From IMG/VR virus record IMGVR_UViG_3300046171_000252, positions 124,001 to 188,000 of that record: a DNA stretch of 64,000 nt. One strand, written 5' to 3'. Shown piece after piece: positions 10,852 to 35,606 of this stretch (position 1 is the stretch's first letter; the number at the start of each line of letters is the position of its first letter). The notes below the pieces were generated by a model. It saw nothing but the letters and a program-made list of their open reading frames with translations, did no database searches and was not told the DNA's origin. The position numbers and the translations under genes were made by a program.

Positions 10852-10859
10852 TATAAATA
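10852..10859 (+). promoter_or_regulatory. T4-type late promoter
   Basis: TATAAATA; further TAAATA cores at 11896, 13585, 14990 and TATAAATA at 19916. Confidence 0.75.
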
Positions 10860-10886
10860 TCTTTATAAGAATTGTGTTGTCTGGAA

Positions 10887-11711
10887 ATGAACTCCAAAGA
10901 AATTAATAGTATTGCAGAAGCATATGCTAAAATGAATATCCGAGGAAATGATTCTGAGGAGCAAAAAAAGCGTCTTGAGAAGAAGCGTGGTATGAAACTG
11001 GACGATCATCCACAATTTAAAAAGGAAGCAAAATTAGATCCTGTTGGTCAGGAAGATGAAGATATTAATAATGATGGTAAGAAAGACAAAACAGATAAGT
11101 ATTTGAAGAATCGTCGTAAGGCAATCGGTAATGCAATTGCCAAAGAGCAAGTTCATCTAAATGATATTTCCAAGACTTACTTAGATCAGATTGCGACTAA
11201 TGAAGATGAAATTGATGAGGCACTGACTGGTGAGCGTCGTCAGGCAGCTGCAAAGAAAATGAATACCGCAAAGTCTGGTAGTGATCGTGCCACTGCATTT
11301 AATCTTGCCACTCGCAATGACATGGGTTCTTCTTACCAGAAGAAATCAACCGGTGGTAAGGGTAGTAGATTCCCTGGATATGGAGACAGAGGTGCTGGTA
11401 ATGCAGCAGCACGTCGTCAAGGTAAGGAACCTATGAGACAAGGACCTGAAAAGAAAGTTTCTGAAGAAACCTTGAAAGCAACCGGATTGTTCTCTGAAAA
11501 AGAGATTGCTGCTATAGAAGAAGCAATGAGTTCTTATGACAAAAATCGTAAGAGAGCAGCACAAAGAGCAGCAGACAGAAATGCTGCCAGAGCTGCTGGT
11601 AAGACTGGTGTAGTTCCTGGTGTAGGTTATGTAACTCCTAATAAGGAGAGAGAAACTTATACTGATGAGAAGGGCACCGAACGCCATAAGTCAGGAGCAA
11701 AAATGTCATGA
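10887..11711 (+). CDS. basic modular protein, putative internal head protein
   Basis: K/R/G-rich modules between acidic IDEA/VSEE/IEEA linkers; DxNNDG Ca-loop-like motif. Confidence 0.65.
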   Translation: MNSKEINSIAEAYAKMNIRGNDSEEQKKRLEKKRGMKLDDHPQFKKEAKLDPVGQEDEDINNDGKKDKTDKYLKNRRKAIGNAIAKEQVHLNDISKTYLDQIATNEDEIDEALTGERRQAAAKKMNTAKSGSDRATAFNLATRNDMGSSYQKKSTGGKGSRFPGYGDRGAGNAAARRQGKEPMRQGPEKKVSEETLKATGLFSEKEIAAIEEAMSSYDKNRKRAAQRAADRNAARAAGKTGVVPGVGYVTPNKERETYTDEKGTERHKSGAKMS

Positions 11712-11902
11712 TGAAGTCCTATCGGAATTTCTCTGAGGACATTGAGCAGCGTCGTCAGGCAATGAAGCAAAGGTCTAGTCAGCAACTACAAAAATTTAAA
11801 GCAAGAACTGCTGGTGCTCAACAAGAAAGACAGGCAGATACTGCTGATCGCGAAAACCTAAAAAAAGAAATCAAAAAAGAATTGCAACAAGACTCTAAAT
11901 AA
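11708..11902 (+). CDS. small coiled-coil protein with capsid-targeting-like N-terminus
   Basis: MKSYRNFSEDIE start. Confidence 0.6.
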   Translation: MMKSYRNFSEDIEQRRQAMKQRSSQQLQKFKARTAGAQQERQADTADRENLKKEIKKELQQDSK

Positions 11903-11919
11903 TTTAAAATTTTTTTGAT

Positions 11920-13440
11920 ATGTCTAAAAATATTACTATTCCGGGATATCTTGATGGTCCTTTGGGAGTTATTCTAGAGGCGATTGATAGCACTCGTGGT
12001 GTGGAAACTTCTCCTATTCCAATGAGTGTTAATCAAAGCGATGTTGATGAAAACCCTGACACTACCAAAACAGTTCTTTTTAAGGCAAAGATTCATGTAA
12101 ATCCGAGTAGAAGAACTGCTATTAGAGATGAGATTGTTGAGTATTTAAATGGTGTTTTGGATAAGGGCAATTTTAGTGATTTTGTAGAAGTAAGAAGTGG
12201 TACACCAACAAAACCTGACTCTGAGCAATTTGATGTTGTAGTCAAATATTCTGGCAAAAAACCACAAGTAATTAGAATACTAGTTAAACCAACTAATGCT
12301 GGTGGTTCTGGCGGTGGTGCTGCTAAAACTAAAATACAAGAAGTTGGTCAAGCATTATTCACTGCCATAAGATATCTTAAGAATAAAGACCTTGAGTGTC
12401 ATCCCGATGATATTTCAAACTGTTTGACGACTGCTGATTATGAGGCAGGTATGGAGTATGTGGATTGTAATAAAGAAGTCAAAATAGATGAAATAATGGG
12501 ACTTGAGCAGCAATGGAAAGATGCATTTATTTTAGGTGCTAATAAAATTCATAAGGAAGTTGGTGAAAGTGGATGGGAATTTTTGAGGGGAGATAGAATA
12601 GTTGATGATGGAGCACTTAAGAAAGCTTTCACTAGAGTAAAGAAAAATAGTCCGGCTGCACCAGATAATGAAGATAAATGGAATCCCTCTGACATATGGA
12701 TGATAAAGAAAAGTGAAAAGAATGCCATAGTATCAAAACTTGCAGAAGAAAATACGATAGATTGCTTAAATGAATATATTGCTTCAAAGTTTAAAGATAA
12801 AGAATTTATTGGATTATCTTTGAAGAAACTTGGTTCAAGTGCTAGATGGACTACGATGAATCCACCTAATACAAAACAACTTGATAAAGCAAAAAAGGTC
12901 AGATTTATTAGATCTAAAACTTTGCAGGAACTGACAGCATTCTCTGCCATGGATGTATATTTTGTTTTTGCACCATCAGGAAGTAAGACTAAGGATAGTT
13001 TTCAGGCAAGAAATTTTGCAGGAACTAATAGGGGAGATTGGAAGTTGGAAATTAAAGGGGAATTTGCTGCTCAGGGAAAAATTCAGGGGCAGGTAATGAG
13101 AAATCTTTTGACTGCTGCTGGTTTTTCTAAACCTGTTCCTAATGAACCATCTTTTGATGATTGCAAACCAGGATCTAATAAGGTGCAGGCAATTAATAAA
13201 GAAATTTACGATATAATGAATGGGTTAAGTCCTAAACCAAAAGGATGGAATGCTAAAACTGCACAAGCAGAAATTCGCACAAAGGATGCTTCATGGAGGT
13301 ATAGTAAGTTGGCAGGACTAAGACTTTTGGAATGGTTGATGAGTCTCCCTCAATCGGATGCAAATCGTGCTACGAAGGAGATGTATCTTTATGCATCTTC
13401 TCAAACTGATAAATCATCTGTTCATTATAAAATTTATTAG
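11920..13440 (+). CDS. putative PD-(D/E)XK-family nuclease
   Basis: TKIQE...DKWNPSDIW...IGLSLKK; TAAATA at 11896. Confidence 0.55.
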   Translation: MSKNITIPGYLDGPLGVILEAIDSTRGVETSPIPMSVNQSDVDENPDTTKTVLFKAKIHVNPSRRTAIRDEIVEYLNGVLDKGNFSDFVEVRSGTPTKPDSEQFDVVVKYSGKKPQVIRILVKPTNAGGSGGGAAKTKIQEVGQALFTAIRYLKNKDLECHPDDISNCLTTADYEAGMEYVDCNKEVKIDEIMGLEQQWKDAFILGANKIHKEVGESGWEFLRGDRIVDDGALKKAFTRVKKNSPAAPDNEDKWNPSDIWMIKKSEKNAIVSKLAEENTIDCLNEYIASKFKDKEFIGLSLKKLGSSARWTTMNPPNTKQLDKAKKVRFIRSKTLQELTAFSAMDVYFVFAPSGSKTKDSFQARNFAGTNRGDWKLEIKGEFAAQGKIQGQVMRNLLTAAGFSKPVPNEPSFDDCKPGSNKVQAINKEIYDIMNGLSPKPKGWNAKTAQAEIRTKDASWRYSKLAGLRLLEWLMSLPQSDANRATKEMYLYASSQTDKSSVHYKIY

Positions 13441-13441
13441 T

Positions 13442-13666
13442 ATGAAACCTGAAATAAAAGAACTAGTAAAATCCTTCAAATCAAAGAAGAAAAATGAGCG
13501 GGAAAGATATAATGATTTTCTTTATCATTGCTTTATGGCATATCATGATAAAGTAAAATCAAAATCGCCAGATAAGGTTAAGAATAAATATATTATTATG
13601 AGGGATAGTATGCTTAAATACCTCATAGCACATGAACAAGAAGTAATAGAACAATTAAGTAAATGA
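13442..13666 (+). CDS. hypothetical protein
   Basis: ORF filling the gap and coupled to the next gene. Confidence 0.55.
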   Translation: MKPEIKELVKSFKSKKKNERERYNDFLYHCFMAYHDKVKSKSPDKVKNKYIIMRDSMLKYLIAHEQEVIEQLSK

Positions 13667-15012
13667 AGTCTTTCTTTCAATTTCTGCGTGAGAGTACTGC
13701 TGTTCAACAAGCCACCCGTCTTGGATTAAAGACTGATGGTCATGGTGGATGGTATGATAATAAGGGAGAGTTTGTTGCAAAGACAGAAAAGGGAACACTA
13801 AAATTTTTTAATAAGCGTCAGAGAGTAGGAAAGCAAGATCCGCCACAAACTGATAAAGAAAAGAATTTATCTGCAACATCATCGGCACCTGCTGCCGCAC
13901 CAGAGGAACCCACACAGGCAAAAGCAGCACCGGAACAAGAACCACAAAAAGATGCCAACACTCCTGTAGTATTAGAACCACCTGAAGTTGAGAAGACAAA
14001 AGGAACTCTCACAATTGCCTTTGGTAGATTTAATCCTCCTACTACCGGACATGAAAAACTTTTGGATACAGTTTCCAAGTCATCCGATGATGGTGATTAT
14101 GTTATTGTTCCATCGCGTAGTCAAGACCCCAAAAAGAATCCATTAGATACTGATACTAAAGTCTCTATCATGAGACAGATGTTCCCTCAACACAGTGAGA
14201 GAATTGTTAATGACCCTCAGAACAGAACCATCTTTGATGTCTTGAAGAAGGCACATATGGATGGGTATGCCAATGTAAGAATTGTTGGTGGTGCAGATCG
14301 CCAGAAAGAATTTGACAAGTTGGTTAATAATTATAATGGTAAGATGTATCAGTTTGATAATGTAGAGGTTCGTTCTGCCGGTGATCGTGATCCGGACTCT
14401 GATGATGTAGAAGGAATGTCTGCATCAAAGCAAAGAAAGGCAGCAGTAGAAAATAATTTTGATGCATTCTATAAAGGTATTCCCTCCTCAATGTCTAAGA
14501 AGGCAGCAAAGGAAATGTTTAATAATATTCGTCTTGCGATGAATGTTTCTGAAGGATGGAACATGTGGGAAATCTCTCCTATATTTGATTGGAAGAATCT
14601 TCGTGAAAATTATATCAAAAAGAATATATTCAACCTGGGTGAAATTGTTGAAAATTTAAATCATGGACTGGTTGGTAGAATTATTCGTAGAGGCACTAAT
14701 TATCTAATCTGTGTCACAGAGGATAACATTATGTTTAAGTCCTGGATTAAGGATGTTATGGAATCTAAGAAAGAAATGCCTAATGTTGCACCCAAAGATA
14801 GAGCAGCAATTAATGCTCGTGCGAAGAATGTTTTTAAGAAAGATTTAAAAGGAACTGTGGTTGGCATAAACGAACAAAAGAATACTGAGGTGTCTGGAGT
14901 TCCTGGTGATCAACGACTTATTGGAACTGATGCACACTTTAAATATGTAAAGTCTTTGGTTCCTGGAAGTGACTGGGGAAAACAATTCATAAATAAGTAT
15001 AGAAAAAAGTAA
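13663..15012 (+). CDS. HIGH-class cytidylyltransferase-like nucleotidyltransferase
   Basis: FGRFNPPTTGHEKL, KNPL, VGGADR, GMSASK. Confidence 0.85.
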   Translation: MKSFFQFLRESTAVQQATRLGLKTDGHGGWYDNKGEFVAKTEKGTLKFFNKRQRVGKQDPPQTDKEKNLSATSSAPAAAPEEPTQAKAAPEQEPQKDANTPVVLEPPEVEKTKGTLTIAFGRFNPPTTGHEKLLDTVSKSSDDGDYVIVPSRSQDPKKNPLDTDTKVSIMRQMFPQHSERIVNDPQNRTIFDVLKKAHMDGYANVRIVGGADRQKEFDKLVNNYNGKMYQFDNVEVRSAGDRDPDSDDVEGMSASKQRKAAVENNFDAFYKGIPSSMSKKAAKEMFNNIRLAMNVSEGWNMWEISPIFDWKNLRENYIKKNIFNLGEIVENLNHGLVGRIIRRGTNYLICVTEDNIMFKSWIKDVMESKKEMPNVAPKDRAAINARAKNVFKKDLKGTVVGINEQKNTEVSGVPGDQRLIGTDAHFKYVKSLVPGSDWGKQFINKYRKK

Positions 15013-15030
15013 CTATTTGTTTGTTTCCAA

Positions 15031-16257
15031 ATGAGTAACACGATATCTGAAGAACCAAATACACAACAACCAGGTGGTGCTGTTGATAAAGTAAGGAAGG
15101 CTGCGAGGCAACTTGCTTATGATGTTCGCTACAAAGTAAAGGGACAATTTAAGGATGGCCAGAAATCTGATGCCGCATCCTTGAAGCGTGCTTACATGCA
15201 GCAACTGGGTAAGTCTCCTGCTCCTGGTCCTGTCAAAGTAATGGCAAAAAAGATGCTTATTGGAGAAGCATATGATTTAGTTGATGTATCTGATACTGTC
15301 AATGAATCTGTTGTCAATGCACTTCTGAAAGTCTTTGCCAAGAAGACTCAGTTGGAAGATGCAGATGGAAATGTCGCATATGAGGTGACTGACATCGTTC
15401 AGGAGGAGATGAAGGATACGAAGTATAAAATTAGAGTTACTGATAAATCAACCGGTAAGACTTATGTCAGAATGGCAGACCGTGAAAAGATTAGTCAGTT
15501 GAGAGCAGACCCTAGAATCTCTTCTGTTGAGATGACCGGATACGGTGATTCATATGACAAACCTGTCGGTAAAGGAAAGGGTGAAGAAGAAAAGAAGGAG
15601 ACCGCAAAGGAAGAATTCATCCATGAGGTAAATGTAGAGGATGATAATCCTGATGCAAATACCAAGAAGATTGATGTAATGAAAGGTAAGAATAAAATTA
15701 TCATCAATCCAACTCAGTCTGAGGAGATGAAACCCGGAGAGGATACATCTGCAGAAAAGACCAAAGAGAGTTCTGCCGATAAGAGAATCAGAATGGTTAA
15801 GAGAAAGATTCTCCAGAGCAAGATGCAAGCAGTTCGTCAGGGTGCCGGTGCAGATATTGTTGCTCATACTGAATTAGAGGGTGAAGAAATTTCTGAGAAA
15901 GCAGGAAGCGAGTGTCCTCCCGAGTCTTCTTCCAAAAAAGAAAAAGAAGATACTGATGATTACAGAAGTATGCCTGCAAAGGTCAATATGGTTAGAAACA
16001 AATTGAGAGCAATGGGTCTCAAGATGTCGTATGAACCAGAAGGTGATATGGTTGAAGCAACTGAAGATTCATTGAAGGATCGCCGCATGGAGCGTGGTGG
16101 TGTTGGTGGCAACATTCGTTATGACAAAGCACCTAAACCTACCAACACTGCTGGTAAAAAGAAACCCTATGATGGTATGTCTGCAGTTGAAAAAGTAAAG
16201 GCAAGTATCCGTGCCAAGTACGGACAGGGTGCCATTATTGATACTAAGAAAAAGTAA
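15031..16257 (+). CDS. modular acidic/basic protein, putative internal head protein
   Basis: repeated (I/V)xE linkers; SYEPEGDMVE and HTELEGEEISE. Confidence 0.65.
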   Translation: MSNTISEEPNTQQPGGAVDKVRKAARQLAYDVRYKVKGQFKDGQKSDAASLKRAYMQQLGKSPAPGPVKVMAKKMLIGEAYDLVDVSDTVNESVVNALLKVFAKKTQLEDADGNVAYEVTDIVQEEMKDTKYKIRVTDKSTGKTYVRMADREKISQLRADPRISSVEMTGYGDSYDKPVGKGKGEEEKKETAKEEFIHEVNVEDDNPDANTKKIDVMKGKNKIIINPTQSEEMKPGEDTSAEKTKESSADKRIRMVKRKILQSKMQAVRQGAGADIVAHTELEGEEISEKAGSECPPESSSKKEKEDTDDYRSMPAKVNMVRNKLRAMGLKMSYEPEGDMVEATEDSLKDRRMERGGVGGNIRYDKAPKPTNTAGKKKPYDGMSAVEKVKASIRAKYGQGAIIDTKKK

Positions 16258-16457
16258 TGCCTGCAGTATCACAAAAGCAACAGAAGTTCTTTGGAATAGT
16301 TCGTGCCATCCAAAAAGGAGAAATGGCACCGACGACTCCTGAGACTGCAAAGGCAGCTGCCGATATGAAGAAGAAAGATGTGAAGGACTTTGCATCTACT
16401 AAACATAAAGGTCTTCCTGAGAAAAAATCTCTCAAAGAGTTTTTGGAGAATATATAG
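16257..16457 (+). CDS. small basic protein (DUF3008-like)
   Basis: MPAVSQKQQKF...DFASTKHKGLPEKK. Confidence 0.7.
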   Translation: MPAVSQKQQKFFGIVRAIQKGEMAPTTPETAKAAADMKKKDVKDFASTKHKGLPEKKSLKEFLENI

Positions 16458-16478
16458 TATTAGTAATTGAGATTTACC

Positions 16479-16679
16479 ATGCTTGCATTCCTATTACCAT
16501 TAGCATCCAAAATCATTAAAGATGCAGTATCTAAAATTCCAGAAAATGAAGAACTGGGTGAGAAAATGGTTGAGATCTGTCTTGTTATTCTTGCTAAGGC
16601 AGTTAAGTTGACCAAAACTGATATGGATGATCAACTTCTTGAAGTCGTAACCAAATCAATTAACGCACGTAAAGAGTAG
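16479..16679 (+). CDS. conserved cyanophage hypothetical protein
   Basis: amphipathic helix, TKTDMDDQL. Confidence 0.65.
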   Translation: MLAFLLPLASKIIKDAVSKIPENEELGEKMVEICLVILAKAVKLTKTDMDDQLLEVVTKSINARKE

Positions 16680-16682
16680 AAA

Positions 16683-18170
16683 ATGAACCAGAAACACATT
16701 AAGGAAGAGGGTCTGCGTGATTGGTTTGGTAAATCTAAATCAAAAGGTGGCAAAAAAGGATGGGTCAATGTCGTGACAGGAGATTCCTGTGCAAGTGACA
16801 AACCCGGTGAAGGTATTCCTAAATGTGTTTCTTCTTCTAAAAGGGCAAGTATGTCCAAGAAAGAAAGAGTTGCTGCTCAGGCAGCAAAGAGAAGAGAAGA
16901 TCCTGGTCAACAAAAGAAGTCTGGAGCATCTAAACCCACTATGGTAAAAACTGACCGTAAAGTAAGAAAAGAGGCAATGGAAGTTAATGGCGCACTTGAT
17001 GAAAATGTTTCATCTGGAAAATCACGTCTGGCTAAAATGGGTAGGGTTTCCGGAAAACCTACTGGTGCCATTACTAATACAGAAAAATCGGCAGAATTAA
17101 AAAAACAAAAAGACACAGAAAAGTCAAAGGATAAAGCAGTTGCAAATAAAGTTGATGTATCAGGAATGAGTCCTTTTGATGCAGCCAGGGTAAAGAAGAG
17201 AGCAGAATTTAAAGCAGAAAAGGAAAGATTGAGAGCACAGAAAAAAATGAGAAGAGAAGAGACTGAAGTACTTGATGAAGCAAAAGATAAGAAAGGTAAA
17301 GGCAGTGGATCTAAAGATGCCTGTTATCATAAGGTGAAGTCTCGTTATTCTGTATGGCCTTCTGCTTATGCATCTGGAGCACTTGTAAAATGTCGTAAGG
17401 TTGGTGCTGCCAACTGGGGTAATAAGAGTGAAGAGACTGAATTTGATTCTATCTCCTTCCAACAATTTCAAGAGAAGTGTTGGAAAGGTTATGAGAAGAA
17501 AGGTATGAAAAAAATGTTTGGTAAGAAATATCCAAACTGTGTTAAGAAGGAGGGATATGCACCTGGTGATGTGGATCAGAAAGTCGGTGCTGTCACTGCT
17601 ATTCCTAAGAGCGAACAGGATGCTGCCAAAGCAAGAATACTTGCAAAGACAAAGGCAAAAATGAAGAAAGAGGAAGTTGAAGAAATTGGTGAGGGTAAGT
17701 ATTCTAGTTCAGTCAGAGCCACCTATGGCGGAAAGACAGAAACTTTCCCTGTAGAGATTTATAGAAAAAAGTCAAAAAAAGCAGAGGCAAAAAAAGTAGA
17801 GGTAAAAGAAGGTGATGGCGATCCTTGCTGGGATACTCATAAACAAGTTGGCATGAAGAAGAAAGGTGGCAAGATGGTGCCTAACTGTGTGCCAAAAAAC
17901 GAGGAGGTAGAGACTCAGAATGAAGGAGCAGCATGGACAAAAAAATCCGGTAAGTCAGAATCCGGAGGACTCAATGAAAAAGGACGTAAGTCTTATGAAA
18001 GAGAAAATCCTGGTAGTGATCTAAAAGCACCATCTAAAAAGAAAGGCAACAAACGTAGAGCATCATTCTGTGCTAGAATGAAAGGTATGAAAAAGAAACT
18101 AACCTCTGCTAAAACTGCAAGAGATCCTGATAGCAGAATTAATAAGTCTCTTAGAGCTTGGAATTGCTGA
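16683..18170 (+). CDS. Lys-rich polyprotein-like protein with about 8 modules
   Basis: modules separated by Glu-rich linkers; two CW...GMKK..GK..PNCV repeats. Confidence 0.75.
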   Translation: MNQKHIKEEGLRDWFGKSKSKGGKKGWVNVVTGDSCASDKPGEGIPKCVSSSKRASMSKKERVAAQAAKRREDPGQQKKSGASKPTMVKTDRKVRKEAMEVNGALDENVSSGKSRLAKMGRVSGKPTGAITNTEKSAELKKQKDTEKSKDKAVANKVDVSGMSPFDAARVKKRAEFKAEKERLRAQKKMRREETEVLDEAKDKKGKGSGSKDACYHKVKSRYSVWPSAYASGALVKCRKVGAANWGNKSEETEFDSISFQQFQEKCWKGYEKKGMKKMFGKKYPNCVKKEGYAPGDVDQKVGAVTAIPKSEQDAAKARILAKTKAKMKKEEVEEIGEGKYSSSVRATYGGKTETFPVEIYRKKSKKAEAKKVEVKEGDGDPCWDTHKQVGMKKKGGKMVPNCVPKNEEVETQNEGAAWTKKSGKSESGGLNEKGRKSYERENPGSDLKAPSKKKGNKRRASFCARMKGMKKKLTSAKTARDPDSRINKSLRAWNC

Positions 18171-18272
18171 CAAATAAATTTTTTGGTGAATACAAATAGT
18201 TAAATAATAATTGTATAGCAACGATACAATTTAACTACACTAGATTAGAATCCAATCACATACTATAAACAT

Positions 18273-18539
18273 ATGGACGAAACTAAAGAGGTGTCTGATT
18301 TTTCTATGACCAGGAATGAATGTCCTAAGTGTGGGGCATTATGGTTAAATGGTCAGCATTATTGGGTAGGCACTGGAAAGTTGGGAGACCCTCATGATTT
18401 GGCTGGACTAGTTTGTAATAAACATGCCGATAACCAATGTATAAATCCTTGTAGGGGTTCTACTTCTGGAGATACTTGGGAGAAACGTCTTGAATTCTTA
18501 AATAAAGCACTTGAATCTTATGAGTCACCGAATAACTGA
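18273..18539 (+). CDS. Cys-rich (zinc-finger-like) protein
   Basis: CPKC...C...C..C. Confidence 0.65.
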   Translation: MDETKEVSDFSMTRNECPKCGALWLNGQHYWVGTGKLGDPHDLAGLVCNKHADNQCINPCRGSTSGDTWEKRLEFLNKALESYESPNN

Positions 18540-18702
18540 AATAAAACCTGAACATTTTTTGACAAAAGAAGAATGTCAGGAAATGATTGATAAAGCAATT
18601 GACAAACACAATAAAACTGCTACAATTATTAGTGCTATTCTTGGGGGAATTCTTTTAACCTTTTATTCTCATGGAGTTCTTTCGTTAGTTGGTCGTGTTT
18701 AA
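18520..18702 (+). CDS. small membrane protein
   Basis: C-terminal TM helix. Confidence 0.6.
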   Translation: MSHRITEIKPEHFLTKEECQEMIDKAIDKHNKTATIISAILGGILLTFYSHGVLSLVGRV

Positions 18703-18788
18703 TACTAAAAGTTCGTCATGAACTCATAACAAAAGTTGAGTATAATCACGCAAAAATATTATAGATAGTGTAGTTATTTGAGATTAAT

Positions 18789-19112
18789 ATGAAGTACTTT
18801 TTTGCACTTCTCATTACACTATTTTTTGCCATGCCAGCATGGGCAGTTGATGTCTCAATGGGTTCTGACGGAAACCTAGTATTTGAACCAAATGAGATTA
18901 CAATCTCTGCTGGTGAGACAGTTCATTTTGTAAACGAAGCATTACCTCCTCACAATATTATTGTAGAGGCTCGTCCGGATCTTTCTAGAGAAGCACTATT
19001 ATTTGCTCCCGGAGAAACACAGGATGTTGTATTTGCTGATGCAGGAGACTATAATTTCTTCTGTGGTCCTCATCAGGGAGCAGGTATGACTGGCGTCATT
19101 CACGTAAATTAA
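18789..19112 (+). CDS. petE: plastocyanin
   Basis: signal peptide ..AWA, PPHN, FFCGPHQGAGM copper ligands. Confidence 0.95.
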   Translation: MKYFFALLITLFFAMPAWAVDVSMGSDGNLVFEPNEITISAGETVHFVNEALPPHNIIVEARPDLSREALLFAPGETQDVVFADAGDYNFFCGPHQGAGMTGVIHVN

Positions 19113-19122
19113 ATTAATTAAA

Positions 19123-19593
19123 ATGAAAGTAGGAATGATTGGGTTAGGTCGTACTGGTGAAGGTATGGCCCGCCGTATGATCGAAAAAGGAATTGAAGTT
19201 TGGGGTTATAGTAGTACTAACTATGAAAATGCCTGTGGACAATATGAAGCAGGGCACCTTAGTGGATGTGTAACTTCAATAGAGTATCTTGTCCGAGCAG
19301 TTAAAACTGATAATAAAAAATTTACTAGTGCTGGTAGAATTCCTGGCATCTTTCAGATTACACTCCCAGAGCAAAAGGCAGAAGACACACTTGATGAGTT
19401 GCTACCTTTACTTGAAGAGGGTGATATTATTATTGATCACAGCACCAGTGACATAAAAAAATGTCAGGAACTTGAAAAGTATTGTTCTAAGTTAGGTATA
19501 TCCTATATCTTCTCTGGTGTATATGGATCACCTGGTTCTATTAATGTTTGTTCAAAAATTTTTCAATCCTTATCACCAGGTAATATTAAATGA
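19123..19593 (+). CDS. NAD(P)-binding domain of 6-phosphogluconate dehydrogenase family (N-terminal domain only)
   Basis: MKVGMIGLGRTGEGMARRM, GDIIIDHS; catalytic C-terminal domain absent. Confidence 0.75.
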   Translation: MKVGMIGLGRTGEGMARRMIEKGIEVWGYSSTNYENACGQYEAGHLSGCVTSIEYLVRAVKTDNKKFTSAGRIPGIFQITLPEQKAEDTLDELLPLLEEGDIIIDHSTSDIKKCQELEKYCSKLGISYIFSGVYGSPGSINVCSKIFQSLSPGNIK

Positions 19594-19721
19594 CCTTAGC
19601 TGATGTCTTACTTTTCGGATCACTACCCTTTATATGTGCCACCGCATATTTCGGGTACAGAAGAGGTGAAAATAACTATTATGAAACCGACTCCTACTCA
19701 GGAAATGGAACAGCGCATTAG
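19590..19721 (+). CDS. ndhP: NdhP-like single-TM subunit of NDH-1L (43 aa)
   Basis: MTLADVLLFGSLPFICATAYFGYRRGENNYYETDSYSGNGTAH; TM plus FG..N.YY.TD.Y.GNG.AH tail as in cyanobacterial NdhP; ATGA overlap with upstream gene. Confidence 0.75.
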   Translation: MTLADVLLFGSLPFICATAYFGYRRGENNYYETDSYSGNGTAH

Positions 19722-19902
19722 AATGCGATTTGCATTCGCAATGTCTTCCTTTGGTAGAATGTTCATGCCAAATAAAATCACACATGAGATGAGAGCACTT
19801 TGTAATGAATGGTCTATGATTGAAGAGCAACCACCTCAAGGTGATTTATATAAAGTAGATAGATATTTTTTGGAATTGTGGAAAAGTCGTGGTGAAGACT
19901 AA
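19705..19902 (+). CDS. hypothetical protein
   Basis: 3' part of ORF 19603..19902; start codon uncertain. Confidence 0.55.
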   Translation: MEQRIRMRFAFAMSSFGRMFMPNKITHEMRALCNEWSMIEEQPPQGDLYKVDRYFLELWKSRGED

Positions 19903-19957
19903 ACTAATTATATTTTATAAATATCTTTAGGAAAAGATTCTTGCGGGTACAAAAACA

Positions 19958-21052
19958 ATGTCTCTTTGGGGAAAAAATGACAATAAACTTTCAACAGGAA
20001 CAGTTTCGGTAAATCATGCTAACCGAACTGTAGTTGGAAGCGGAACAACTTTTGGAGTAGCAGGTAATGGTGTAGTTGGTGATATTATCCGATTCGGTCA
20101 ACCATTAAGTGGTGCTGATGGATATTTTGGAGAAGCAGTTATCGTATCCGTTGCCAGTACTTTATCAATTAAAATTGATTCAGTAGAAGGATTGAGTGCG
20201 CGAGATATTACCGATAAAGCTTATCAGGTGACACAATCTCCAAAATCTACTCCTACTGATGCTGCTTTTAATAAGTTTTCAAGAGCAGTTGAAGAGCGTG
20301 GTGATCTCAAAATAACAACGGCAGTCAGTGGTGATGTCGCGGTTGGTGGAACTTCTATCACTATTACGGGTGATGCATCGGCATCTAGTCTTTTAGATAG
20401 TGACGTTCTTATCATCACTCATGGTGAGAGAAGAAAGAGGAGACAATTTAGTGAAGTCTATGGTATTGTAAGTGGTGGAAGCACTATTCTTGTTAAGAAT
20501 GGATTGAAAGGCGTACATAATATTTACAAAACTGATGGTACGGAATATAACATTGGTGCTAGTTCTATCATCCTTAGAGAGGCACTTTTCCGTACTGCTT
20601 TTGATGGTGGCATCGATGGAGCACATATAGACGAACTTTCTGTAGGTGATACATTTACTGCTGGAACCAACTCCATTGGAATTGGAACCATAAACGATAG
20701 AACTGAAACGAGTGCTACGGTTGTATTAAATACTGGTCTTACACAAAAAATTGATGCAAGTATTTTTGGAGCAAAAGTCACTATAAAGAGGGGAGCACTT
20801 AGTGGTTCCTTAGTTGAAGTTCGTGGTAAAGAAACTGTATCAGGTGATGAGACACAAGTTCTTGGTGTTTCAACTGATGGTACTGCACATGCTAATGGCA
20901 GTGCTTGGGAAGTTCCTCATGCTGGATGGGTGGGTGTTACGACATACATGGACATGCATGGAAATCTAAGAGTTAAGAAAGAAACTCTTGTTGCCATGTC
21001 TGGCATTGCAACTGGTAATGCACCAATCTACGATTCGAACCCATTTGCATAA
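19958..21052 (+). CDS. probable virion structural protein
   Basis: TATAAATA at 19916; G/T/S-rich beta character; MSLWG.. and HAGWVG..RVKKETLVAMS. Confidence 0.65.
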   Translation: MSLWGKNDNKLSTGTVSVNHANRTVVGSGTTFGVAGNGVVGDIIRFGQPLSGADGYFGEAVIVSVASTLSIKIDSVEGLSARDITDKAYQVTQSPKSTPTDAAFNKFSRAVEERGDLKITTAVSGDVAVGGTSITITGDASASSLLDSDVLIITHGERRKRRQFSEVYGIVSGGSTILVKNGLKGVHNIYKTDGTEYNIGASSIILREALFRTAFDGGIDGAHIDELSVGDTFTAGTNSIGIGTINDRTETSATVVLNTGLTQKIDASIFGAKVTIKRGALSGSLVEVRGKETVSGDETQVLGVSTDGTAHANGSAWEVPHAGWVGVTTYMDMHGNLRVKKETLVAMSGIATGNAPIYDSNPFA

Positions 21053-21068
21053 TTTGTAATAATATAAT

Positions 21069-21440
21069 ATGAGATTTGATGAATTGAACGAAAGTAATTA
21101 TTTACTTTTTGCTATAAAATTTTATAACAACCCTCAATCTGTTACTAGAGAAGATTTTGAGGATGATTTGAAGCGAATAAAATATATTAAAAGACTTCTG
21201 AAACGGTATAAAAATACTGGTGAATTAAAAATTCATCTAATTTTAAATCATTTGACTGTATTGTTTAATGTATTTGATGAGGCTGCCGTGCCTCTTTTAT
21301 TTTATAACTTAGAAAGAGAACTTTGGCCTTTCATAAAAAGTTTCTTATTATATTTGAATAGATTACCAGAATACCCATACACTGAAATAAATAGTATACA
21401 AGAAGATCTAAATTGTTTATCATCTCTTAATTCGGTCTAA
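21069..21440 (+). CDS. conserved T4-like hypothetical protein
   Basis: FEDDLKRIKYIKRLLKRY..LILNHL. Confidence 0.75.
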   Translation: MRFDELNESNYLLFAIKFYNNPQSVTREDFEDDLKRIKYIKRLLKRYKNTGELKIHLILNHLTVLFNVFDEAAVPLLFYNLERELWPFIKSFLLYLNRLPEYPYTEINSIQEDLNCLSSLNSV

Positions 21441-21934
21441 TGGATAAAGTAGATACACTCATTACTAAAATTAGACAACTTAGAGAAGCAGCACCTACTA
21501 ACTCTACTGGTGCTGGAATTGCTAGGTTTGATAAATTTCTATTTCCCATTGATGATGATACTTTAACTCAAGACTACCAAACTCCTGCTGAGGTTGGATT
21601 AGCAAAGGATGAGTTCATGGGTGTATATCCTGTTATGAAGTTGCAACTCAATAAGAGTAGTGACGGACCTTCAATTGATTCTATGGTAGATGCGTCAAAG
21701 GAGTATATGAACGTGATAGATGATAGAAGACTTAGTAATATTATGAATTTGTCCAGATCAATTAAAGAAGAGGTTGCAGCAGCACCTACGAATAATGTTG
21801 GTGGTGGTGCAATTGCCGGAACTGCACCTGCCGGTGATGATCCTCCGGTTAGGTTAAAGAAGAAAAGAAAACCAACACCAATTGGTCGCTATGGAACCCG
21901 TAGAACCTGGATGCAAAATCTCAGAAATGGATAA
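21440..21934 (+). CDS. protein with two (L/I)xE-APTN..G.G.IA modules
   Basis: LREAAPTNSTGAGIA and IKEEVAAAPTNNVGGGAIA. Confidence 0.7.
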   Translation: MDKVDTLITKIRQLREAAPTNSTGAGIARFDKFLFPIDDDTLTQDYQTPAEVGLAKDEFMGVYPVMKLQLNKSSDGPSIDSMVDASKEYMNVIDDRRLSNIMNLSRSIKEEVAAAPTNNVGGGAIAGTAPAGDDPPVRLKKKRKPTPIGRYGTRRTWMQNLRNG

Positions 21935-22313
21935 AGATAGCGTTAATTCAGCAATACTAGAAAGAGTTGAGAGAGTTGTAGAAGCACTGCAAGATAACTC
22001 CATCAAGATGGGTGAGTTATTAGCAGTTCATAATGAGAAATTAGATAAGCAAGATCGTATTGATGCAGTTCTCTTTGAGAAAATAGAATCCTTGCATAAG
22101 GATATGGATCGTGCCACGGATGAAATAAAGAAAGGATGTGAAAGGGATATAAGAAAGATTGATGATCGTCTTCGTCTTATGGAAAAGAAGATGTGGAGCA
22201 TTGCTGGTTCTCTCATTGTAATATCATTTTTGGTTAGCGTGCCGGGTCAAAGAATTATGGCAAACGTCTTGACACCAAACGCATCACCGACTATAATAAG
22301 AGAAGCAAAATAG
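21927..22313 (+). CDS. coiled-coil protein with C-terminal TM helix
   Basis: heptad pattern, then MWSIAGSLIVISFLVSV. Confidence 0.7.
   Translation: MDKDSVNSAILERVERVVEALQDNSIKMGELLAVHNEKLDKQDRIDAVLFEKIESLHKDMDRATDEIKKGCERDIRKIDDRLRLMEKKMWSIAGSLIVISFLVSVPGQRIMANVLTPNASPTIIREAK
22269..22297 (+). promoter_or_regulatory. sigma70-type promoter for primase/nrdAB
   Basis: TTGACA-17-TATAAT inside the upstream CDS. Confidence 0.7.
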
Positions 22314-34540: not shown

Positions 34541-34614
<74 letters not shown>

Positions 34615-34633
34615 TTGTCCTTTTCTATTTCTT

Positions 34634-34837
34634 ATGGGCAAATATGATTTTGGTGGGCAACCACCAATAGCAGTCAACATCCTCAGACTCATTAGTGAGT
34701 TAGAAGGTTCTTCCCAAATGCTTAAATATATGGGATTTGAAGAAGATATGAATGCGATCAATGAAATGAAGAAGAGATACTATAAACTCTACTTCAAGAC
34801 CAATAAGGAAGAAAAGGCAAAAAACAATCCTCTGTAG
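34634..34837 (+). CDS. hypothetical protein; stop codon lies inside tRNA-Asn
   Basis: ORF track. Confidence 0.6.
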   Translation: MGKYDFGGQPPIAVNILRLISELEGSSQMLKYMGFEEDMNAINEMKKRYYKLYFKTNKEEKAKNNPL

Positions 34838-34899
34838 CTCAGCGGTAGAGCCGACGACTGTTAATCGTCTGGTCGCAGGTTCGAATCCTGCCGGGGGAG
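34828..34899 (+). tRNA. tRNA-Asn(GTT)
   Basis: TCCTCTG/CGGGGGA, GACGA-CTGTTAA-TCGTC, GTTCGAA. Confidence 0.93.
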
Positions 34900-34979
34900 T
34901 TGACAGGATATTCATCTTGTCGTATACTATGCTTGTCCGTGTGAAGGAAGTGTTTGAGGGATTTTTCTCTCACCACTCT

Positions 34980-35568: not shown

Positions 35569-35606
35569 TCTTCAATATAGACACATAAACATCTAGATGT
35601 TATACT

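What the first reader, a model, noticed from the sequence alone, without database searches (positions are those of the whole stretch)
10852..21934. Late-expressed capsid-cargo locus with T4 capsid-targeting-like sequences
Seen: repeated TAAATA promoters, plus MKSFFQFLRE|S (13663), MKSYRNFSE (11711), KSLKEFLE (end of 16257) and internal SFQQFQE (16683). Established: T4 internal proteins use an N-terminal MKT(Y/F)xEFxxE-type capsid-targeting sequence that gp21 removes. Neighbouring ORFs 10887, 15031 and 21440 share (L/I/V)xE-delimited modules. Inference: an expanded internal-protein system that delivers enzymes and peptides with the DNA, possibly for anti-defence or host takeover.
Basis: partly seen in the sequence, partly recalled or inferred. 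Interest (0 to 1): 0.75.

Follow-up and report, generated by a model that had tools for sequence, protein, structure and literature searches.

The report
Capsid-cargo gene island in a cyanophage
Between its DNA-replication genes, a T4-like cyanophage has a block of probably late-expressed genes, an NMNAT-like enzyme plus several basic, modular proteins, that carry the N-terminal address tag and protease-cut motifs phage T4 uses to load proteins into its head; this would explain why the enzyme keeps being found in cyanophage particles.

Summary
The window is part of a 207.6-kb T4-like cyanomyovirus (nearest named relative: S-SKS1). The locus fills the variable slot between gp41/mazG and gp61/nrdA.

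All four quoted peptide motifs are present. Only one is a convincing T4-type capsid-targeting sequence (CTS): the cytidylyltransferase-like/NMNAT-like ORF at 13663 starts MKSFFQFLRE|S, against T4 IPII/IPIII MKTYQEFIAE|A.
- M1, F4, F7 and E10 are (nearly) invariant in homologs down to 40% identity.
- The motif is almost exclusively N-terminal: 75 of 78 occurrences in 355,000 residues.
- At least 10 unrelated ORF families in the same slot or genomes carry it.
- Orthologs of this enzyme were found by mass spectrometry in virions of S-SM1, S-SZBM1 and S-CREM2, and an NMNAT-like protein in S-SCSM1. None of the papers read gives a packaging mechanism.
- In P-HM2, RNA-seq makes the syntenic genes a late island flanked by middle genes.

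Raw counts of (L/I/V)xE and of ATAAATA are not above chance. Comparative data still show modules swapped exactly at hydrophobic-x-E junctions, and leaders exchanged in front of one module.

The 11920 ORF and petE/gnd are not supported as cargo. Cleavage, packaging and ejection in this phage remain inferred.

Verdict: a new member of the T4 internal-protein kind.

The parts
10852..10859 (+). Late-promoter-like box TATAAATA, 27 nt before the ATG at 10887
   Evidence: The same box and spacing precede the scaffold, sheath and other structural genes of this genome. The cyanophage late consensus NATAAATA is taken from PMC2984593.
10887..11711 (+). 274-aa basic (pI 9.6) modular protein with a DxDxDG-like 'VGQEDEDINNDGKKDKTDKYLKNRR' module that also occurs inside long polyproteins of other phages
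   Evidence: It matches parts of phrog_9737, phrog_3326, phrog_4359, phrog_38880 and phrog_764. Its I109-D-E111|A site is kept in 17 of 30 homologs.
11708..11902 (+). 64-aa basic ORF. From its second Met (11711-11737) it reads MKSYRNFSE, a variant leader
   Evidence: Found only in five close relatives (L007-L011). Weak candidate.
11920..13440 (+). 506-aa ORF (phrog_1462) with no leader; not supported as cargo
   Evidence: The AF2 model (pLDDT 71) gives only weak Pol-beta-type nucleotidyltransferase matches (E about 0.01, low TM). Its positional counterpart in S-SZBM1 (SSZBM1_142) is absent from the virion list.
13442..13666 (+). Conserved 74-aa basic ORF (MKPEIKELVKSF...) whose end overlaps the start of the next gene
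   Evidence: Present in 64 of the related loci.
13663..13692 (+). CTS-like leader MKSFFQFLRE, with the predicted gp21 cut after E10
13663..15012 (+). 449-aa precursor: leader, small conserved N-domain, variable Pro/Ala/Glu linker, (T/H)xGH nucleotidyltransferase core (about 113-295) and a C-terminal beta domain
   Evidence: Pfam PF01467 scores 31.5 bits against a cut-off of 21. phrog_395 E 3e-103. The AF2 core matches NMNAT/NadD/PPAT folds. G129-H130 and S253-A254-S255-K256..R258 are invariant.
14988..14995 (+). Late-promoter-like box CATAAATA, 35 nt before the ATG at 15031
   Evidence: Metatranscriptome contigs from two runs begin at 15015 and 15025 (weak).
15031..16257 (+). 408-aa basic polyprotein-like ORF. 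Conserved hxE sites: MSNTISE|E (31/31), LIGE|A (41/45), EEFIHE|V at 15610-15627 (23/43), EISE|K (28/31), and SYEPEGDMVE|A at 16027-16056
   Evidence: Its last about 65 residues exist as a stand-alone 68-90-aa ORF starting MK[ST]FK.FI.E|EGYD in six other loci.
16257..16457 (+). 66-aa DUF3008 module ending KKSLKE|FLENI (tail at 16425-16454)
   Evidence: Pfam DUF3008 scores 23.5 bits, just below the cut-off of 24. phrog_28725 E 1e-36. In 33 related ORFs the module ends KHKGLP.KK.[VIL]x(x)E and is then fused to divergent modules.
16479..16679 (+). 66-aa conserved hydrophobic/amphipathic ORF (MLAFLLPLASKII...; T4-GC 424)
   Evidence: The ortholog PHM2_168 is Late (D) in P-HM2.
16683..18170 (+). 495-aa very basic (pI 9.9) chain of short Cys-containing modules ending in DUF6321. 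N-terminus MNQKHIKE|E. The internal SFQQFQE|KCW lies at 17454-17474
   Evidence: In L012, L015 and L046 it is fused to DUF3008 in one ORF.
18599..18626 (+). Sigma-70-like promoter (11 of 12 matches plus TG) ahead of petE (18789-19112) and a truncated gnd (19123-19593). This is a metabolic-gene insert, not cargo
19916..19923 (+). Late-promoter-like box TATAAATA, 34 nt before the ATG at 19958
19958..21052 (+). 364-aa ORF (MSLWGKNDN...) related to the cyanophage virion 'head protein' family; no leader
   Evidence: phrog_3086 and phrog_26159. SSZBM1_136 and Syn1_166 match phrog_613 'head protein' plus phrog_26159. SSZBM1_136 is in the virion proteome. PHM2_169 is Late (E). Pairwise similarity to SSZBM1_136 is weak (E 0.009).
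21069..21440 (+). DUF7207 protein (123 aa), conserved in all cyanomyovirus loci examined
   Evidence: PHM2_170 is Late (E).
21440..21934 (+). 164-aa ORF made of two copies of [amphipathic leader ending L/I-x-E | AAPTN...GGG]. Sites: KIRQLRE|AAPTNS (21467-21487) and LSRSIKE|EVAAAPTNN (21749-21769). It copies the MCP cut site and mature N-terminus
   Evidence: Both hxE sites are kept in 13/13 and 27/27 homologs. About 65-aa single-module versions occur in more than 20 loci, and one (L049) has an MKTFRQFMDE leader instead. BLASTP against the phage's own gp23 gives E 0.005 exactly across the cut site.
22269..22297 (+). Perfect sigma-70-type promoter (TTGACA-17-TATAAT) before the gp61 primase gene; marks the end of the island

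Best explanation
The locus is the cyanomyovirus counterpart of the T4 internal-protein system. It sits as an island of probably late-transcribed genes between gp41/mazG and gp61.

Proposed mechanism:
1. Late in infection, NATAAATA promoters drive these genes together with the head genes. (Inferred here; shown for orthologs in P-HM2.)
2. The NMNAT-like nucleotidyltransferase precursor (13663 ORF) uses its 10-residue amphipathic leader MKSFFQFLRE to join the gp22 scaffolding core of the prohead. (Inferred from identity with the T4 CTS at the functional positions.)
3. The gp21 prohead protease cuts after L8-x-E10, as it cuts the major capsid protein at FLGE|AAP, and leaves the mature enzyme inside the head. 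(Inferred.)
4. The neighbouring basic ORFs (10887, 15031, 16257, 16683, 21440) are chains of short modules joined by conserved hydrophobic-x-Glu sites. They are probably taken into the core and cut into small basic proteins and peptides. In relatives the same modules are either free-standing genes with their own MK(S/T)FxxF(L/I)xE leader or fused behind such a junction.
5. The contents leave the head with the DNA. The enzyme could act before any phage gene is expressed, for example on the NAD+ or nucleotide supply. (Speculative.)

The 11920 ORF, petE, gnd and the 19958 'head protein' lie in the same interval but are not part of this mechanism.
For: Leader:
- T4 IPIII and IPII start MKTYQEFIAE|A. 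The window ORF starts MKSFFQFLRE|S. In T4, residues 4 and 7 decide targeting and residues 8 and 10 decide processing (PMC9026906).
- 118 of the 120 closest homologs keep MK[SNT][FL]xxF[LI]xE; the other two start differently, apparently called from a later Met.
- M1, F7 and E10 are invariant and K2 and F4 nearly so in 16 sequences down to 40% identity, while the following 60-100 residues are indel-rich.
- The same leader is on the enzyme in P-TIM68, S-RIM2 and S-SZBM1, in S-SM1 and in the OM43 phage Melnitz-2.

Specificity:
- The core motif occurs 5 times in the genome's 268 proteins, and 2 of these are at residue 4 after MKx. Strict pattern: 2 observed against 0.003 expected.
- In 355,000 residues of 86 loci, 75 of 78 occurrences are N-terminal.
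- The second genomic carrier is a 96-aa ORF directly after gp23, starting MKDFNKFIEE|AA.
- At least 10 unrelated ORF families carry the leader.

Machinery:
- gp21 matches PF03420 at E 7e-35.
- Portal, scaffold and MCP genes are present.
- The MCP sequence FLGE|AAP aligns with T4 FLTE|AEIGG.

Virions:
- T4-GC190 'cytitidyltransferase' is an experimentally determined virion protein of S-SM1.
- SSZBM1_140, its neighbour _139 and _136 are in the S-SZBM1 virion proteome.
- S-SCSM1 NMNAT and S-CREM2 ORF154 were also detected in virions.

Timing:
- PHM2_161-165 and 168-171 are Late. g41, mazG, PHM2_160, g61 and nrdA are Mid.
- Promoter boxes lie at structural-gene spacing before 10887, 15031 and 19958.

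Modules:
- The stand-alone ORF MK.F..FL.E|LNRFEK... equals the module that follows ...SYEPEGESIDE| in a 519-aa polyprotein.
- The stand-alone ORF MK[ST]FK.FI.E|EGYD... equals the C-terminal module of the 15031 ORF after ...SYEPEGDMVE|.
- DUF3008 always ends in [VIL]x(x)E before divergent partners.
- The AP(T/V)NN module carries either an MDIDRIIS.VR.LKE| leader or an MKTFRQFMDE| leader.
- Site conservation is given.
Against: - There are no proteomic, N-terminal-sequence or expression data for this phage itself.
- The ATAAATA count is not above chance, and hxE counts are not enriched over composition.
- hxE sites are equally conserved inside the folded enzyme core, so conservation alone does not mark a cut site.
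- In S-SZBM1 the second leader-bearing ORF (_191) is not in the published virion list.
- In P-HM2 and Syn1 the enzyme gene is split and its catalytic part lacks the leader.
- Authors of the virion proteomes caution that the enzyme might be an abundant late protein that co-purifies.
- SSZBM1_139, the virion-detected neighbour, is not pairwise-alignable to the 15031 ORF and shares only PHROG-level modules.
- The 15031 and 16683 ORFs have no CTS-type leader, only a short MxxxIxE|E start.
- Ejection into the host is untested anywhere in cyanophages.
Confidence: 0.6

Rival explanations
1. Only the nucleotidyltransferase, and perhaps one or two small ORFs, is capsid cargo. The rest of the interval is an ordinary hypervariable island of unrelated late and metabolic genes. 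Its modular, charged proteins have other roles, and their hxE sites are a by-product of Lys/Glu-rich composition.
For: - hxE counts are not above composition-matched shuffles.
- There is no BLASTP paralogy inside the locus.
- petE and gnd have their own sigma-70-like promoter.
- The 11920 ORF has no leader and no virion evidence.
- The 15031 ORF cannot be aligned to the virion-detected SSZBM1_139.
Against: - Module boundaries coincide exactly with ...E| in at least four independent fusion, fission or leader-swap cases (also 42 and 44).
- Both hxE sites of the 21440 family are kept in 100% of homologs and resemble the MCP cut site.
- The whole syntenic block is late in P-HM2.
- SSZBM1_139 is in virions and shares PHROG modules with ORFs 10887 and 16683.
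Confidence: 0.25
2. The leader-bearing and modular basic proteins are prohead-core or DNA-condensing components, analogous to T4 gp67/gp68 and the gp22-derived internal peptides. They are needed for head assembly or charge neutralisation, and are degraded or retained rather than delivered as effectors.
For: - All ORFs from 10887 to 18170 are basic, pI 8.9-10.
- T4 core proteins are likewise cut at many (L/I)xE sites, and fragments stay in the head (PMC9026906).
- The 21440 family copies the MCP N-terminus, which suggests an interaction with the shell or with the protease.
- The island is conserved in position across cyanomyoviruses.
Against: - The gene and module content of the slot is highly variable between close relatives. 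That fits accessory cargo better than essential scaffolding.
- One member is a conserved enzyme with intact catalytic motifs, which has no obvious use as scaffold.
Confidence: 0.2
3. The conserved N-terminus is not a capsid-targeting signal. It could be an oligomerisation or membrane helix, or a translation-initiation constraint, and the enzyme appears in virion preparations as an abundant late contaminant.
For: - The authors of the S-SCSM1 and S-CREM2 proteomes raise contamination as a possibility.
- emPAI is low (0.26) in S-SZBM1.
- The AF2 confidence for residues 1-8 is low.
Against: - The variation pattern is at protein level: positions 3, 5, 6 and 9 vary while 1, 2, 4, 7, 8 and 10 are fixed.
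- The same leader sits on at least 10 unrelated proteins, and one of them lies beside the MCP gene.
- It matches a tag experimentally sufficient for packaging in T4.
- The enzyme, or an NMNAT-like protein, was detected in four independent virion proteomes made by different laboratories and methods.
Confidence: 0.1

Closest known systems
Phage T4 internal proteins IPI/IPII/IPIII with their capsid-targeting sequence (Mullaney and Black 1996; reviewed in PMC9026906)
   Same: - A 10-residue N-terminal leader M-K-(S/T)-(Y/F)-x-x-F-(I/L)-x-E, followed by a small residue.
- The phage encodes gp21, gp22 and gp23 homologs.
- The cargo is basic.
- The leader is found on unrelated cargo proteins.
- The gene content is hypervariable.
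   Different: - The main cargo is a 449-aa enzyme with a long linker, not an 8-20-kDa protein.
- The genes form a late island between gp41 and gp61.
- Several members are multi-module chains rather than single proteins.
- Cleavage, copy number and ejection have not been shown.
T4 Alt (packaged ADP-ribosyltransferase) and the T4 core proteins gp22/gp67/gp68, which gp21 cuts into internal peptides
   Same: - An enzyme is carried in the head and processed by the prohead protease.
- Core proteins are cut at multiple (L/I)xE sites and leave small peptides in the head.
   Different: - There is no sequence relationship.
- The modules here are shuffled between genes and phages, and can be free-standing with a CTS or fused behind a junction. 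This has not been described for T4 in the papers read.
Virion-associated cytidylyltransferase/NMNAT-like proteins of cyanophages: T4-GC190 in S-SM1, SSZBM1_140, S-SCSM1 ORF91 and S-CREM2 ORF154
   Same: - For S-SM1 and S-SZBM1: the same protein family (PF01467, phrog_395), the same genomic slot, detected in purified particles, and the CTS-like start checked here. The S-SCSM1 and S-CREM2 proteins were not aligned here.
   Different: - The published reports leave open whether the enzyme is carried or is a contaminant, and none of the papers read mentions a targeting sequence.
- The window's protein has a 37-residue insertion near the C-terminus relative to the 412-aa form.
Ejection-protein 'bolus' of giant phages (SPN3US, phiKZ), processed by a gp21-like prohead protease
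   Same: Many head-internal proteins are matured by cleavage after Glu in a short x-E motif. (Own knowledge; PMC5694885 was listed but not read in detail.)
   Different: Different phage lineage, no T4-type N-terminal CTS, and a different motif context.

Membership tests
T4-type CTS-targeted internal (head-cargo) proteins | N-terminal leader of about 10 residues resembling MKTYQEFIAE: aromatic at 4, Phe at 7, aliphatic at 8, Glu at 10 | tested here: met
   The 13663 ORF (MKSFFQFLRE) was compared with T4 ipII/ipIII translated from NC_000866. Functional positions are from PMC9026906. Conservation. The 11711 ORF meets it only partly (Y4, F7, S8, E9).
T4-type CTS-targeted internal (head-cargo) proteins | The phage encodes the gp21 prohead protease and a gp22 scaffolding core, and its MCP is cut at hxE | tested here: met
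   PF03420 hit at G000:102657-103106, E 7e-35. Scaffold and MCP are adjacent. The MCP site FLGE|A aligns with T4 FLTE|A. Actual cutting of the MCP is inferred.
T4-type CTS-targeted internal (head-cargo) proteins | The leader is removed by gp21 after the Glu | not testable with these tools
   Requires N-terminal or semi-tryptic proteomics, or an in-vitro protease assay.
T4-type CTS-targeted internal (head-cargo) proteins | The protein is present in mature virions | tested here: inconclusive
   No data for this phage. Orthologs were detected in S-SM1, S-SZBM1 and S-CREM2 virions, and an NMNAT-like protein (not aligned here) in S-SCSM1 virions. The S-SM1 and S-SZBM1 orthologs carry the leader.
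T4-type CTS-targeted internal (head-cargo) proteins | Late expression together with the head genes | tested here: inconclusive
   NATAAATA boxes lie at structural-gene spacing, but the motif count is not above chance. The orthologous block is Late in P-HM2 RNA-seq. Metatranscriptome contigs cover the locus but give no timing.
T4-type CTS-targeted internal (head-cargo) proteins | Ejected into the host with the DNA | not testable with these tools
   No data in any cyanophage in the papers read.
Cytidylyltransferase-like (PF01467) / NMNAT-like nucleotidyltransferases | Pfam model above the gathering score | tested here: met
   31.5 bits against a cut-off of 21, residues 118-231.
Cytidylyltransferase-like (PF01467) / NMNAT-like nucleotidyltransferases | (T/H)xGH motif and a C-terminal ISST-like motif conserved | tested here: met
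   GRFNPPTTGHEKLL with G129 and H130 invariant. S253-A254-S255-K256..R258 are invariant in 16 sequences. Assigning these as the catalytic motifs rests on my own knowledge of the family.
Cytidylyltransferase-like (PF01467) / NMNAT-like nucleotidyltransferases | Rossmann-like nucleotidyltransferase fold | tested here: met
   The AF2 core (pLDDT 80-90 over 113-295) matches NadM, NadD, archaeal NMNAT and PPAT at probability 1.0, with TM by target 0.5-0.7. There was no hit by sequence alone in the PDB.
Cytidylyltransferase-like (PF01467) / NMNAT-like nucleotidyltransferases | Substrate (NMN/NaMN versus another phospho-substrate) | not testable with these tools
   Needs an enzyme assay.
DUF3008 (PF11450) | Pfam model above the gathering score | tested here: not met
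   23.5 bits against a cut-off of 24: marginal. PHROG matches are strong (phrog_28725, E 1e-36), so it is homologous to phage DUF3008-like modules but just below Pfam's curated line.
Cyanophage virion 'head protein' family (phrog_613 / T4-GC 537) | Match to the family profile | tested here: inconclusive
   The 19958 ORF matches phrog_3086 and phrog_26159, not phrog_613. SSZBM1_136 and Syn1_166 match phrog_613 plus phrog_26159. They share the MSL(W/Y)G start, position and late box. Pairwise E is 0.009.

The most novel reading that the evidence does not exclude
The mazG-gp61 island of cyanomyoviruses and related marine T4-like phages is a natural plug-and-play protein-delivery cassette.
- Any module becomes head cargo either by acquiring the 10-residue MK(S/T)FxxF(L/I)xE leader or by being fused behind a hydrophobic-x-Glu junction of a carrier polyprotein. 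Evolution shuffles modules between these two states.
- Its constant member, an NMNAT-like enzyme, is injected with the DNA to secure NAD+ or nucleotide metabolism, or to pre-empt NAD+-depleting defences, before any phage gene is expressed.
- A further constant member (the 21440 family) is a decoy that copies the capsid protein's own cleavage site and mature N-terminus. This device is shared with Aeromonas T4-like phages.
Probability: 0.25. Interest if true: 0.8.

Novelty: new member of a known kind. Interest (0 to 1): 0.55.

Why it matters
Four virion proteomes have reported a cytidylyltransferase/NMNAT-like enzyme in cyanophage particles. Their authors could not say whether it is cargo or a contaminant.

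A T4-type targeting leader, conserved from Synechococcus and Prochlorococcus phages to an OM43 phage, gives a concrete and testable packaging mechanism. It also gives a simple sequence rule for predicting other head cargo in the most abundant marine myoviruses.

If the cargo is delivered, these phages begin infection with an enzyme and a set of small basic proteins already in the cell. That bears on host takeover and on counter-defence such as NAD+ reconstitution.

The leader could also serve as a tool for loading foreign proteins into cyanophage heads, as the CTS does in T4.

Tried and rejected
- Counting (L/I/V)xE against composition-matched shuffles gave no enrichment in ORFs 10887, 15031 and 21440. 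I dropped the count argument and used junction conservation and module swaps instead.
- BLASTP of all locus proteins against each other found no paralogy. The shared-module idea holds only at PHROG-profile level and against relatives.
- The ATAAATA count against dinucleotide shuffles is not enriched.
- The enzyme has no hit in the PDB by sequence.
- The structure of the 11920 ORF gave only weak, low-TM Pol-beta nucleotidyltransferase matches. I do not claim a function or cargo status for it.
- Pairwise comparison of the 15031 ORF with the virion-detected SSZBM1_139 and with P-TIM68 gp159 showed no convincing alignment.
- Pfam and PHROG scans of several other leader-bearing proteins (621, 524, 401, 301, 130 and 117 aa) found no known domains.
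- Metatranscriptome contigs cover parts of the locus, and two begin just downstream of the 14988 box. They are assembler contigs from mixed relatives and show neither timing nor true 5' ends.
- The 'glycerol-3-phosphate cytidylyltransferase' with diel expression in PMC7238727 is a different gene family.
- The Syn9 transcriptome paper (PMC5029184) is not held.
- I considered stop-codon read-through from the 16257 ORF into the next gene, because the two are in the same frame. I rejected it because more distant relatives do not keep the frame (coordinates).
- tblastn of the 21440 ORF against named phages found only 7 records, so the spread of that family could not be measured this way.

Full report
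WHAT THE WINDOW IS

The window is bases 124001-188000 of a single 207,616-base virus record. The record is a T4-like cyanomyovirus, and its nearest named relative is Synechococcus phage S-SKS1.

The finding's interval lies between gp43, uvsX, gp41 and a MazG-like gene upstream and the gp61 primase, nrdA and nrdB downstream. S-SKS1, P-TIM68, S-RIM2, S-SZBM1, Syn1, P-HM2 and S-SM1 all have a variable set of genes in the same slot.

The + strand ORFs of the interval are:
- 10887-11711: 274 aa.
- 11708-11902: 64 aa.
- 11920-13440: 506 aa.
- 13442-13666: 74 aa.
- 13663-15012: 449 aa, PF01467.
- 15031-16257: 408 aa.
- 16257-16457: 66 aa, DUF3008-like.
- 16479-16679: 66 aa.
- 16683-18170: 495 aa, DUF6321 at the C-terminus.
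- Two small ORFs.
- petE at 18789-19112.
- A gnd fragment at 19123-19593.
- 19603-19902.
- 19958-21052: 364 aa.
- 21069-21440: DUF7207.
- 21440-21934: 164 aa.

CHECK OF THE OBSERVATION

Their weight differs a great deal.

MKSFFQFLRE is the true N-terminus of the PF01467 protein.
- A strict pattern (M, K/R, aromatic at 4, F at 7, aliphatic at 8, E at 10) is met by 2 of 268 predicted proteins of the genome, against 0.003 expected when the first 25 residues are shuffled.
- The second carrier is a 96-aa ORF immediately after the major capsid gene, starting MKDFNKFIEE|AA.
- In 2,116 ORFs from 86 related or comparison loci, the strict pattern occurs 76 times against 0.04 expected. Of 78 occurrences of the core anywhere in 355,337 residues, 75 are at the N-terminus.

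The other three motifs are weaker.
- MKSYRNFSE (11711) is a variant with E at position 9 and no aliphatic residue at 8. It is found only in five near-identical relatives.
- KSLKEFLENI is a C-terminal tail, conserved in L007-L011, L014 and L083, and at the end of a 301-aa fusion in L009. Its LKE aligns with the [VIL]x(x)E that ends the DUF3008 module in 33 related ORFs. It marks a module junction, not a leader.
- SFQQFQE is an internal hxE (hydrophobic-x-Glu) site before a Cys-Trp module, kept in 5 of 6 aligned homologs.

Promoters. NATAAATA boxes lie at 10852, 13583, 14988, 19916 and 21386.
- The count of ATAAATA is not above chance: 15 against 19.9 in shuffles.
- The non-random features are the strand bias (14:1 in the window, 45:3 in the genome) and the position. 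24 of 45 genomic sites lie 8-50 nt upstream of an ATG, including those before the scaffold and sheath genes.
- The boxes before 10887, 15031 and 19958 have that spacing.

The (L/I/V)xE counts in ORFs 10887, 15031 and 21440 are not above composition-matched shuffles.

THE LEADER IS A T4-TYPE CAPSID-TARGETING SEQUENCE BY EVERY TEST AVAILABLE HERE

Match to T4.
- T4 ipIII and ipII, translated from NC_000866, start MKTYQEFIAE|AS and MKTYQEFIAE|AR.
- The T4 literature shows that these ten residues suffice for packaging. Residues 4 and 7 carry the targeting and residues 8 and 10 carry the processing by gp21 (PMC9026906).
- The window protein has F4, F7, L8 and E10.

Conservation.
- Of the 120 closest database homologs, 118 start MK[SNT][FL]xxF[LI]xE. 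Two start differently, apparently called from a later Met.
- In an alignment reaching 40% identity, M1, F7 and E10 are invariant and K2 and F4 nearly so. Positions 3, 5, 6 and 9 vary, and the next 60-100 residues are full of indels. That is a protein-level constraint on one face of a short helix.
- The same start is on the enzyme of P-TIM68 (MKSFTSFFTE|A), S-RIM2 (MKKFSAFLTE|A), S-SZBM1 (MRFRQFIIE|A), S-SM1 (MKKFSAFLNE|A) and the OM43 phage Melnitz-2 (MKKFSEIIE|A).
- P-HM2 and Syn1 have a split gene whose catalytic part lacks the leader.

Machinery.
- The phage encodes the gp21 protease (PF03420, E 7e-35), a scaffold and a capsid protein.
- The capsid propeptide junction FLGE|AAP aligns with the T4 junction FLTE|AEIGG.

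THE CARGO ENZYME

- The core (residues about 113-295) has the GRFNPPTTGHEKLL and SASKQR motifs, both invariant.
- Its AF2 model (pLDDT 80-90 in the core) matches NadM, NadD, archaeal NMNAT and PPAT structures.
- Sequence alone finds nothing in the PDB.
- The substrate is unknown.

EVIDENCE FROM RELATIVES THAT THE FAMILY IS IN VIRIONS AND IS LATE

Virion proteomes.
- Sullivan et al. 2010 list T4-GC190 'cytitidyltransferase' as a cyanophage-core gene and an experimentally determined virion protein of S-SM1.
- The S-SZBM1 virion proteome contains SSZBM1_140 (the enzyme), its downstream neighbour _139 and the 'virion structural protein' _136 from the same slot.
- S-SCSM1 and S-CREM2 give the same result for the enzyme. 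Both papers say they cannot exclude co-purification.
- None of the papers read mentions a targeting sequence. Full-text searches for 'capsid targeting sequence' together with cyanophage terms returned only T4 reviews.

Timing in P-HM2 RNA-seq.
- Late: PHM2_161-165 and 168-171. These include the two halves of the enzyme gene, the small MLAFLL-type protein, the head protein, DUF7207 and a 21440-like protein.
- Middle: g41, mazG and PHM2_160 on one side, and PHM2_172, PHM2_173, g61 and nrdA on the other.
- The slot is therefore a late island inside the replication module.

In the window, a perfect sigma-70-type promoter (22269-22297) precedes gp61, and a strong one (18599-18626) precedes petE. 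This suggests that petE and gnd are a separately regulated insert.

MODULES AND JUNCTIONS

The basic ORFs 10887, 15031, 16257 and 16683 (pI 9.0-9.9) match overlapping sets of PHROG families in pieces. Relatives show the same pieces in other combinations.

Four cases place a module boundary exactly after a Glu preceded by a hydrophobic residue.
1. 117-aa ORFs starting MK[NKR]F[EN][ED]FL[TS]E|LNRFEK... in three loci are homologous to the C-terminal module of a 519-aa protein that begins right after ...MSYEPEGESIDE|.
2. 68-90-aa ORFs starting MK[ST]FK.FI.E|EGYD... in six loci are homologous to the last 65 residues of the window's 15031 ORF, which follow ...MSYEPEGDMVE|. The SY(E/D)(P/M)(E/D)G..hxE motif recurs about 30 times at such places.
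3. DUF3008 ends in KHKGLP.KK.[VIL]x(x)E before at least eight different partners.
4. The 21440 ORF is two copies of [amphipathic leader ending LRE| or IKE|] followed by an AAPTN...GGG module. Both sites are kept in 13/13 and 27/27 homologs. More than 20 loci have a single-module ORF of about 65 aa starting MDIDRIIS.VR.LKE|. One locus has MKTFRQFMDE| in front of the same module.

Other conserved sites in the 15031 family are MSxxIxE|E at the very N-terminus (31/31), LIGE|A (41/45), EEFIxE|V (23/43) and EISE|K (28/31).

Caveat: hxE sites inside the folded enzyme core are just as conserved. The argument therefore rests on the boundary coincidences, not on conservation as such.

WHAT DOES NOT BELONG

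- The 11920 ORF (phrog_1462) has no leader. Its positional counterpart in S-SZBM1 (SSZBM1_142) is not in the virion list, and its model gives only weak Pol-beta-type nucleotidyltransferase similarity.
- petE and the truncated gnd are metabolic genes.
- The 19958 ORF shares the MSL(W/Y)G start, the position and one PHROG domain with the virion 'head protein' family, and it has a late box. It has no leader, so it is probably a structural protein and not internal cargo.

MOST LIKELY MECHANISM, AND WHAT IS SHOWN OR INFERRED

Shown here:
- The sequence features, their conservation, and their statistical specificity for N-termini.
- The presence of the T4 head-maturation genes.
- The module swaps at E| boundaries.

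Shown by others for orthologs:
- Presence in virions.
- Late transcription.

Inferred:
- Binding of the leader to the scaffolding core.
- Removal of the leader by the prohead protease.
- Cutting of the polyprotein-like ORFs at the conserved junctions.

Speculative:
- Ejection with the DNA.
- A role in NAD+ or nucleotide supply, or in counter-defence.

My confidence by claim:
- About 0.7 that the enzyme is leader-targeted head cargo.
- About 0.45 that most of the neighbouring basic ORFs are processed head cargo too.
- 0.6 for the explanation as a whole.

COMPARISON WITH WHAT IS KNOWN, AND NOVELTY

This works like the T4 IP/CTS system, and it meets the sequence-level and gene-content criteria of that system. 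The biochemical criteria (cleavage, packaging in this phage, ejection) could not be tested.

The virion association of the enzyme is already published. What appears to be new, within the literature I could search, is:
- the recognition of the T4-type leader on the enzyme;
- the leader's spread over many unrelated cyanophage ORFs;
- the interchange between free-standing, leader-bearing genes and junction-fused modules.

I rate it a new member of a known kind, of moderate interest to phage biologists.

LIMITS

- Gene calls are my own ORF calls.
- The 86 loci are phylogenetically related. Occurrence counts therefore overstate independence, and the count of at least 10 distinct carrier families is the safer number.
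- Only one proteome-bearing genome (S-SZBM1) was scanned whole. One of its two leader-bearing ORFs is in the virion list.

Noticed in passing
window 21440-21934; own gp23 at G000:C1:104490-105863 (L087:5491-6864): The 164-aa ORF copies the capsid protein's maturation site and mature N-terminus.
- LRE|AAPTNSTGAG..IARFD in the ORF against LGE|AAPANSTTGGTGAISNFD in gp23. BLASTP E is 0.005 for the first copy and 0.29 for the second, both on gp23 residues 40-84.
- Aeromonas phage 44RR does the same: ORF031c, next to gp41, resembles the mature N-terminus of its own gp23.
- The S-SM1 homolog is even annotated 'major head protein'.
It may be a decoy substrate or a shell-binding peptide conserved across T4-like phages.
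   Followed up: partly
G000:C1:106098-106388 (outside the window, just after gp23; L087:7099-7389): A 96-aa ORF starting MKDFNKFIEE|AASK. It has a Cys-rich module (also found inside a DUF3008 fusion in L009) and a Gly-Asn repeat tail. It is the best second candidate for CTS-targeted cargo in this genome.
   Followed up: partly
window 19123-19593: The gnd-like ORF holds only the N-terminal NAD-binding domain of 6-phosphogluconate dehydrogenase (156 aa). A relative (L009) has a 345-aa version. The next ORF (19603-19902) is unrelated.
   Followed up: partly
window 18599-18626 and 22269-22297: Two near-perfect sigma-70-type promoters. One is about 160 nt upstream of petE. The other (12 of 12 matches) lies just before the gp61 primase gene. 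They bracket the second part of the late island.
   Followed up: no
window 39412-58604: About 20 co-directional genes of 230-370 aa. They include several NAD-dependent sugar epimerases/dehydratases and a UDP-glucose/GDP-mannose dehydrogenase. This is a large polysaccharide or cell-envelope modification cluster.
   Followed up: partly
window 59638-59733 and 59770-61800: A PhotoRC-II RNA motif lies upstream of psbA. The Photo_RC match covers only profile positions 17-203 of one 277-aa ORF, and overlapping ORFs follow it, so psbA looks interrupted or split. No group I intron model reached threshold.
   Followed up: no
window 34541-37044: Four tRNA genes in a region of higher G+C (0.43-0.44) that has minus-strand ORFs, including a 426-aa ORF with no Pfam match.
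   Followed up: no
window 9613-10653: A 346-aa multi-pass membrane protein (DUF401). It is present in only 7 of the related loci and is inserted just upstream of the island.
   Followed up: no
L095 (Melnitz-2) 838-2094; L004-L006, L093, L094 (T4-GC 71 / DUF6267): Many relatives have a late-expressed DUF6267 gene of about 400 aa with a KWDG motif in this slot. It is absent from the window. In Melnitz-2 it carries a 17-residue N-terminal extension ending YITE|.
   Followed up: no
window 14758-14872 and about 14790-14900 (residues 375-410 of the 13663 ORF): The window's enzyme has a 37-residue insertion that the common 412-aa form lacks. A metatranscriptome contig skips 113 nt at 14758-14872. This probably reflects the shorter allele in related phages, not splicing.
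   Followed up: no
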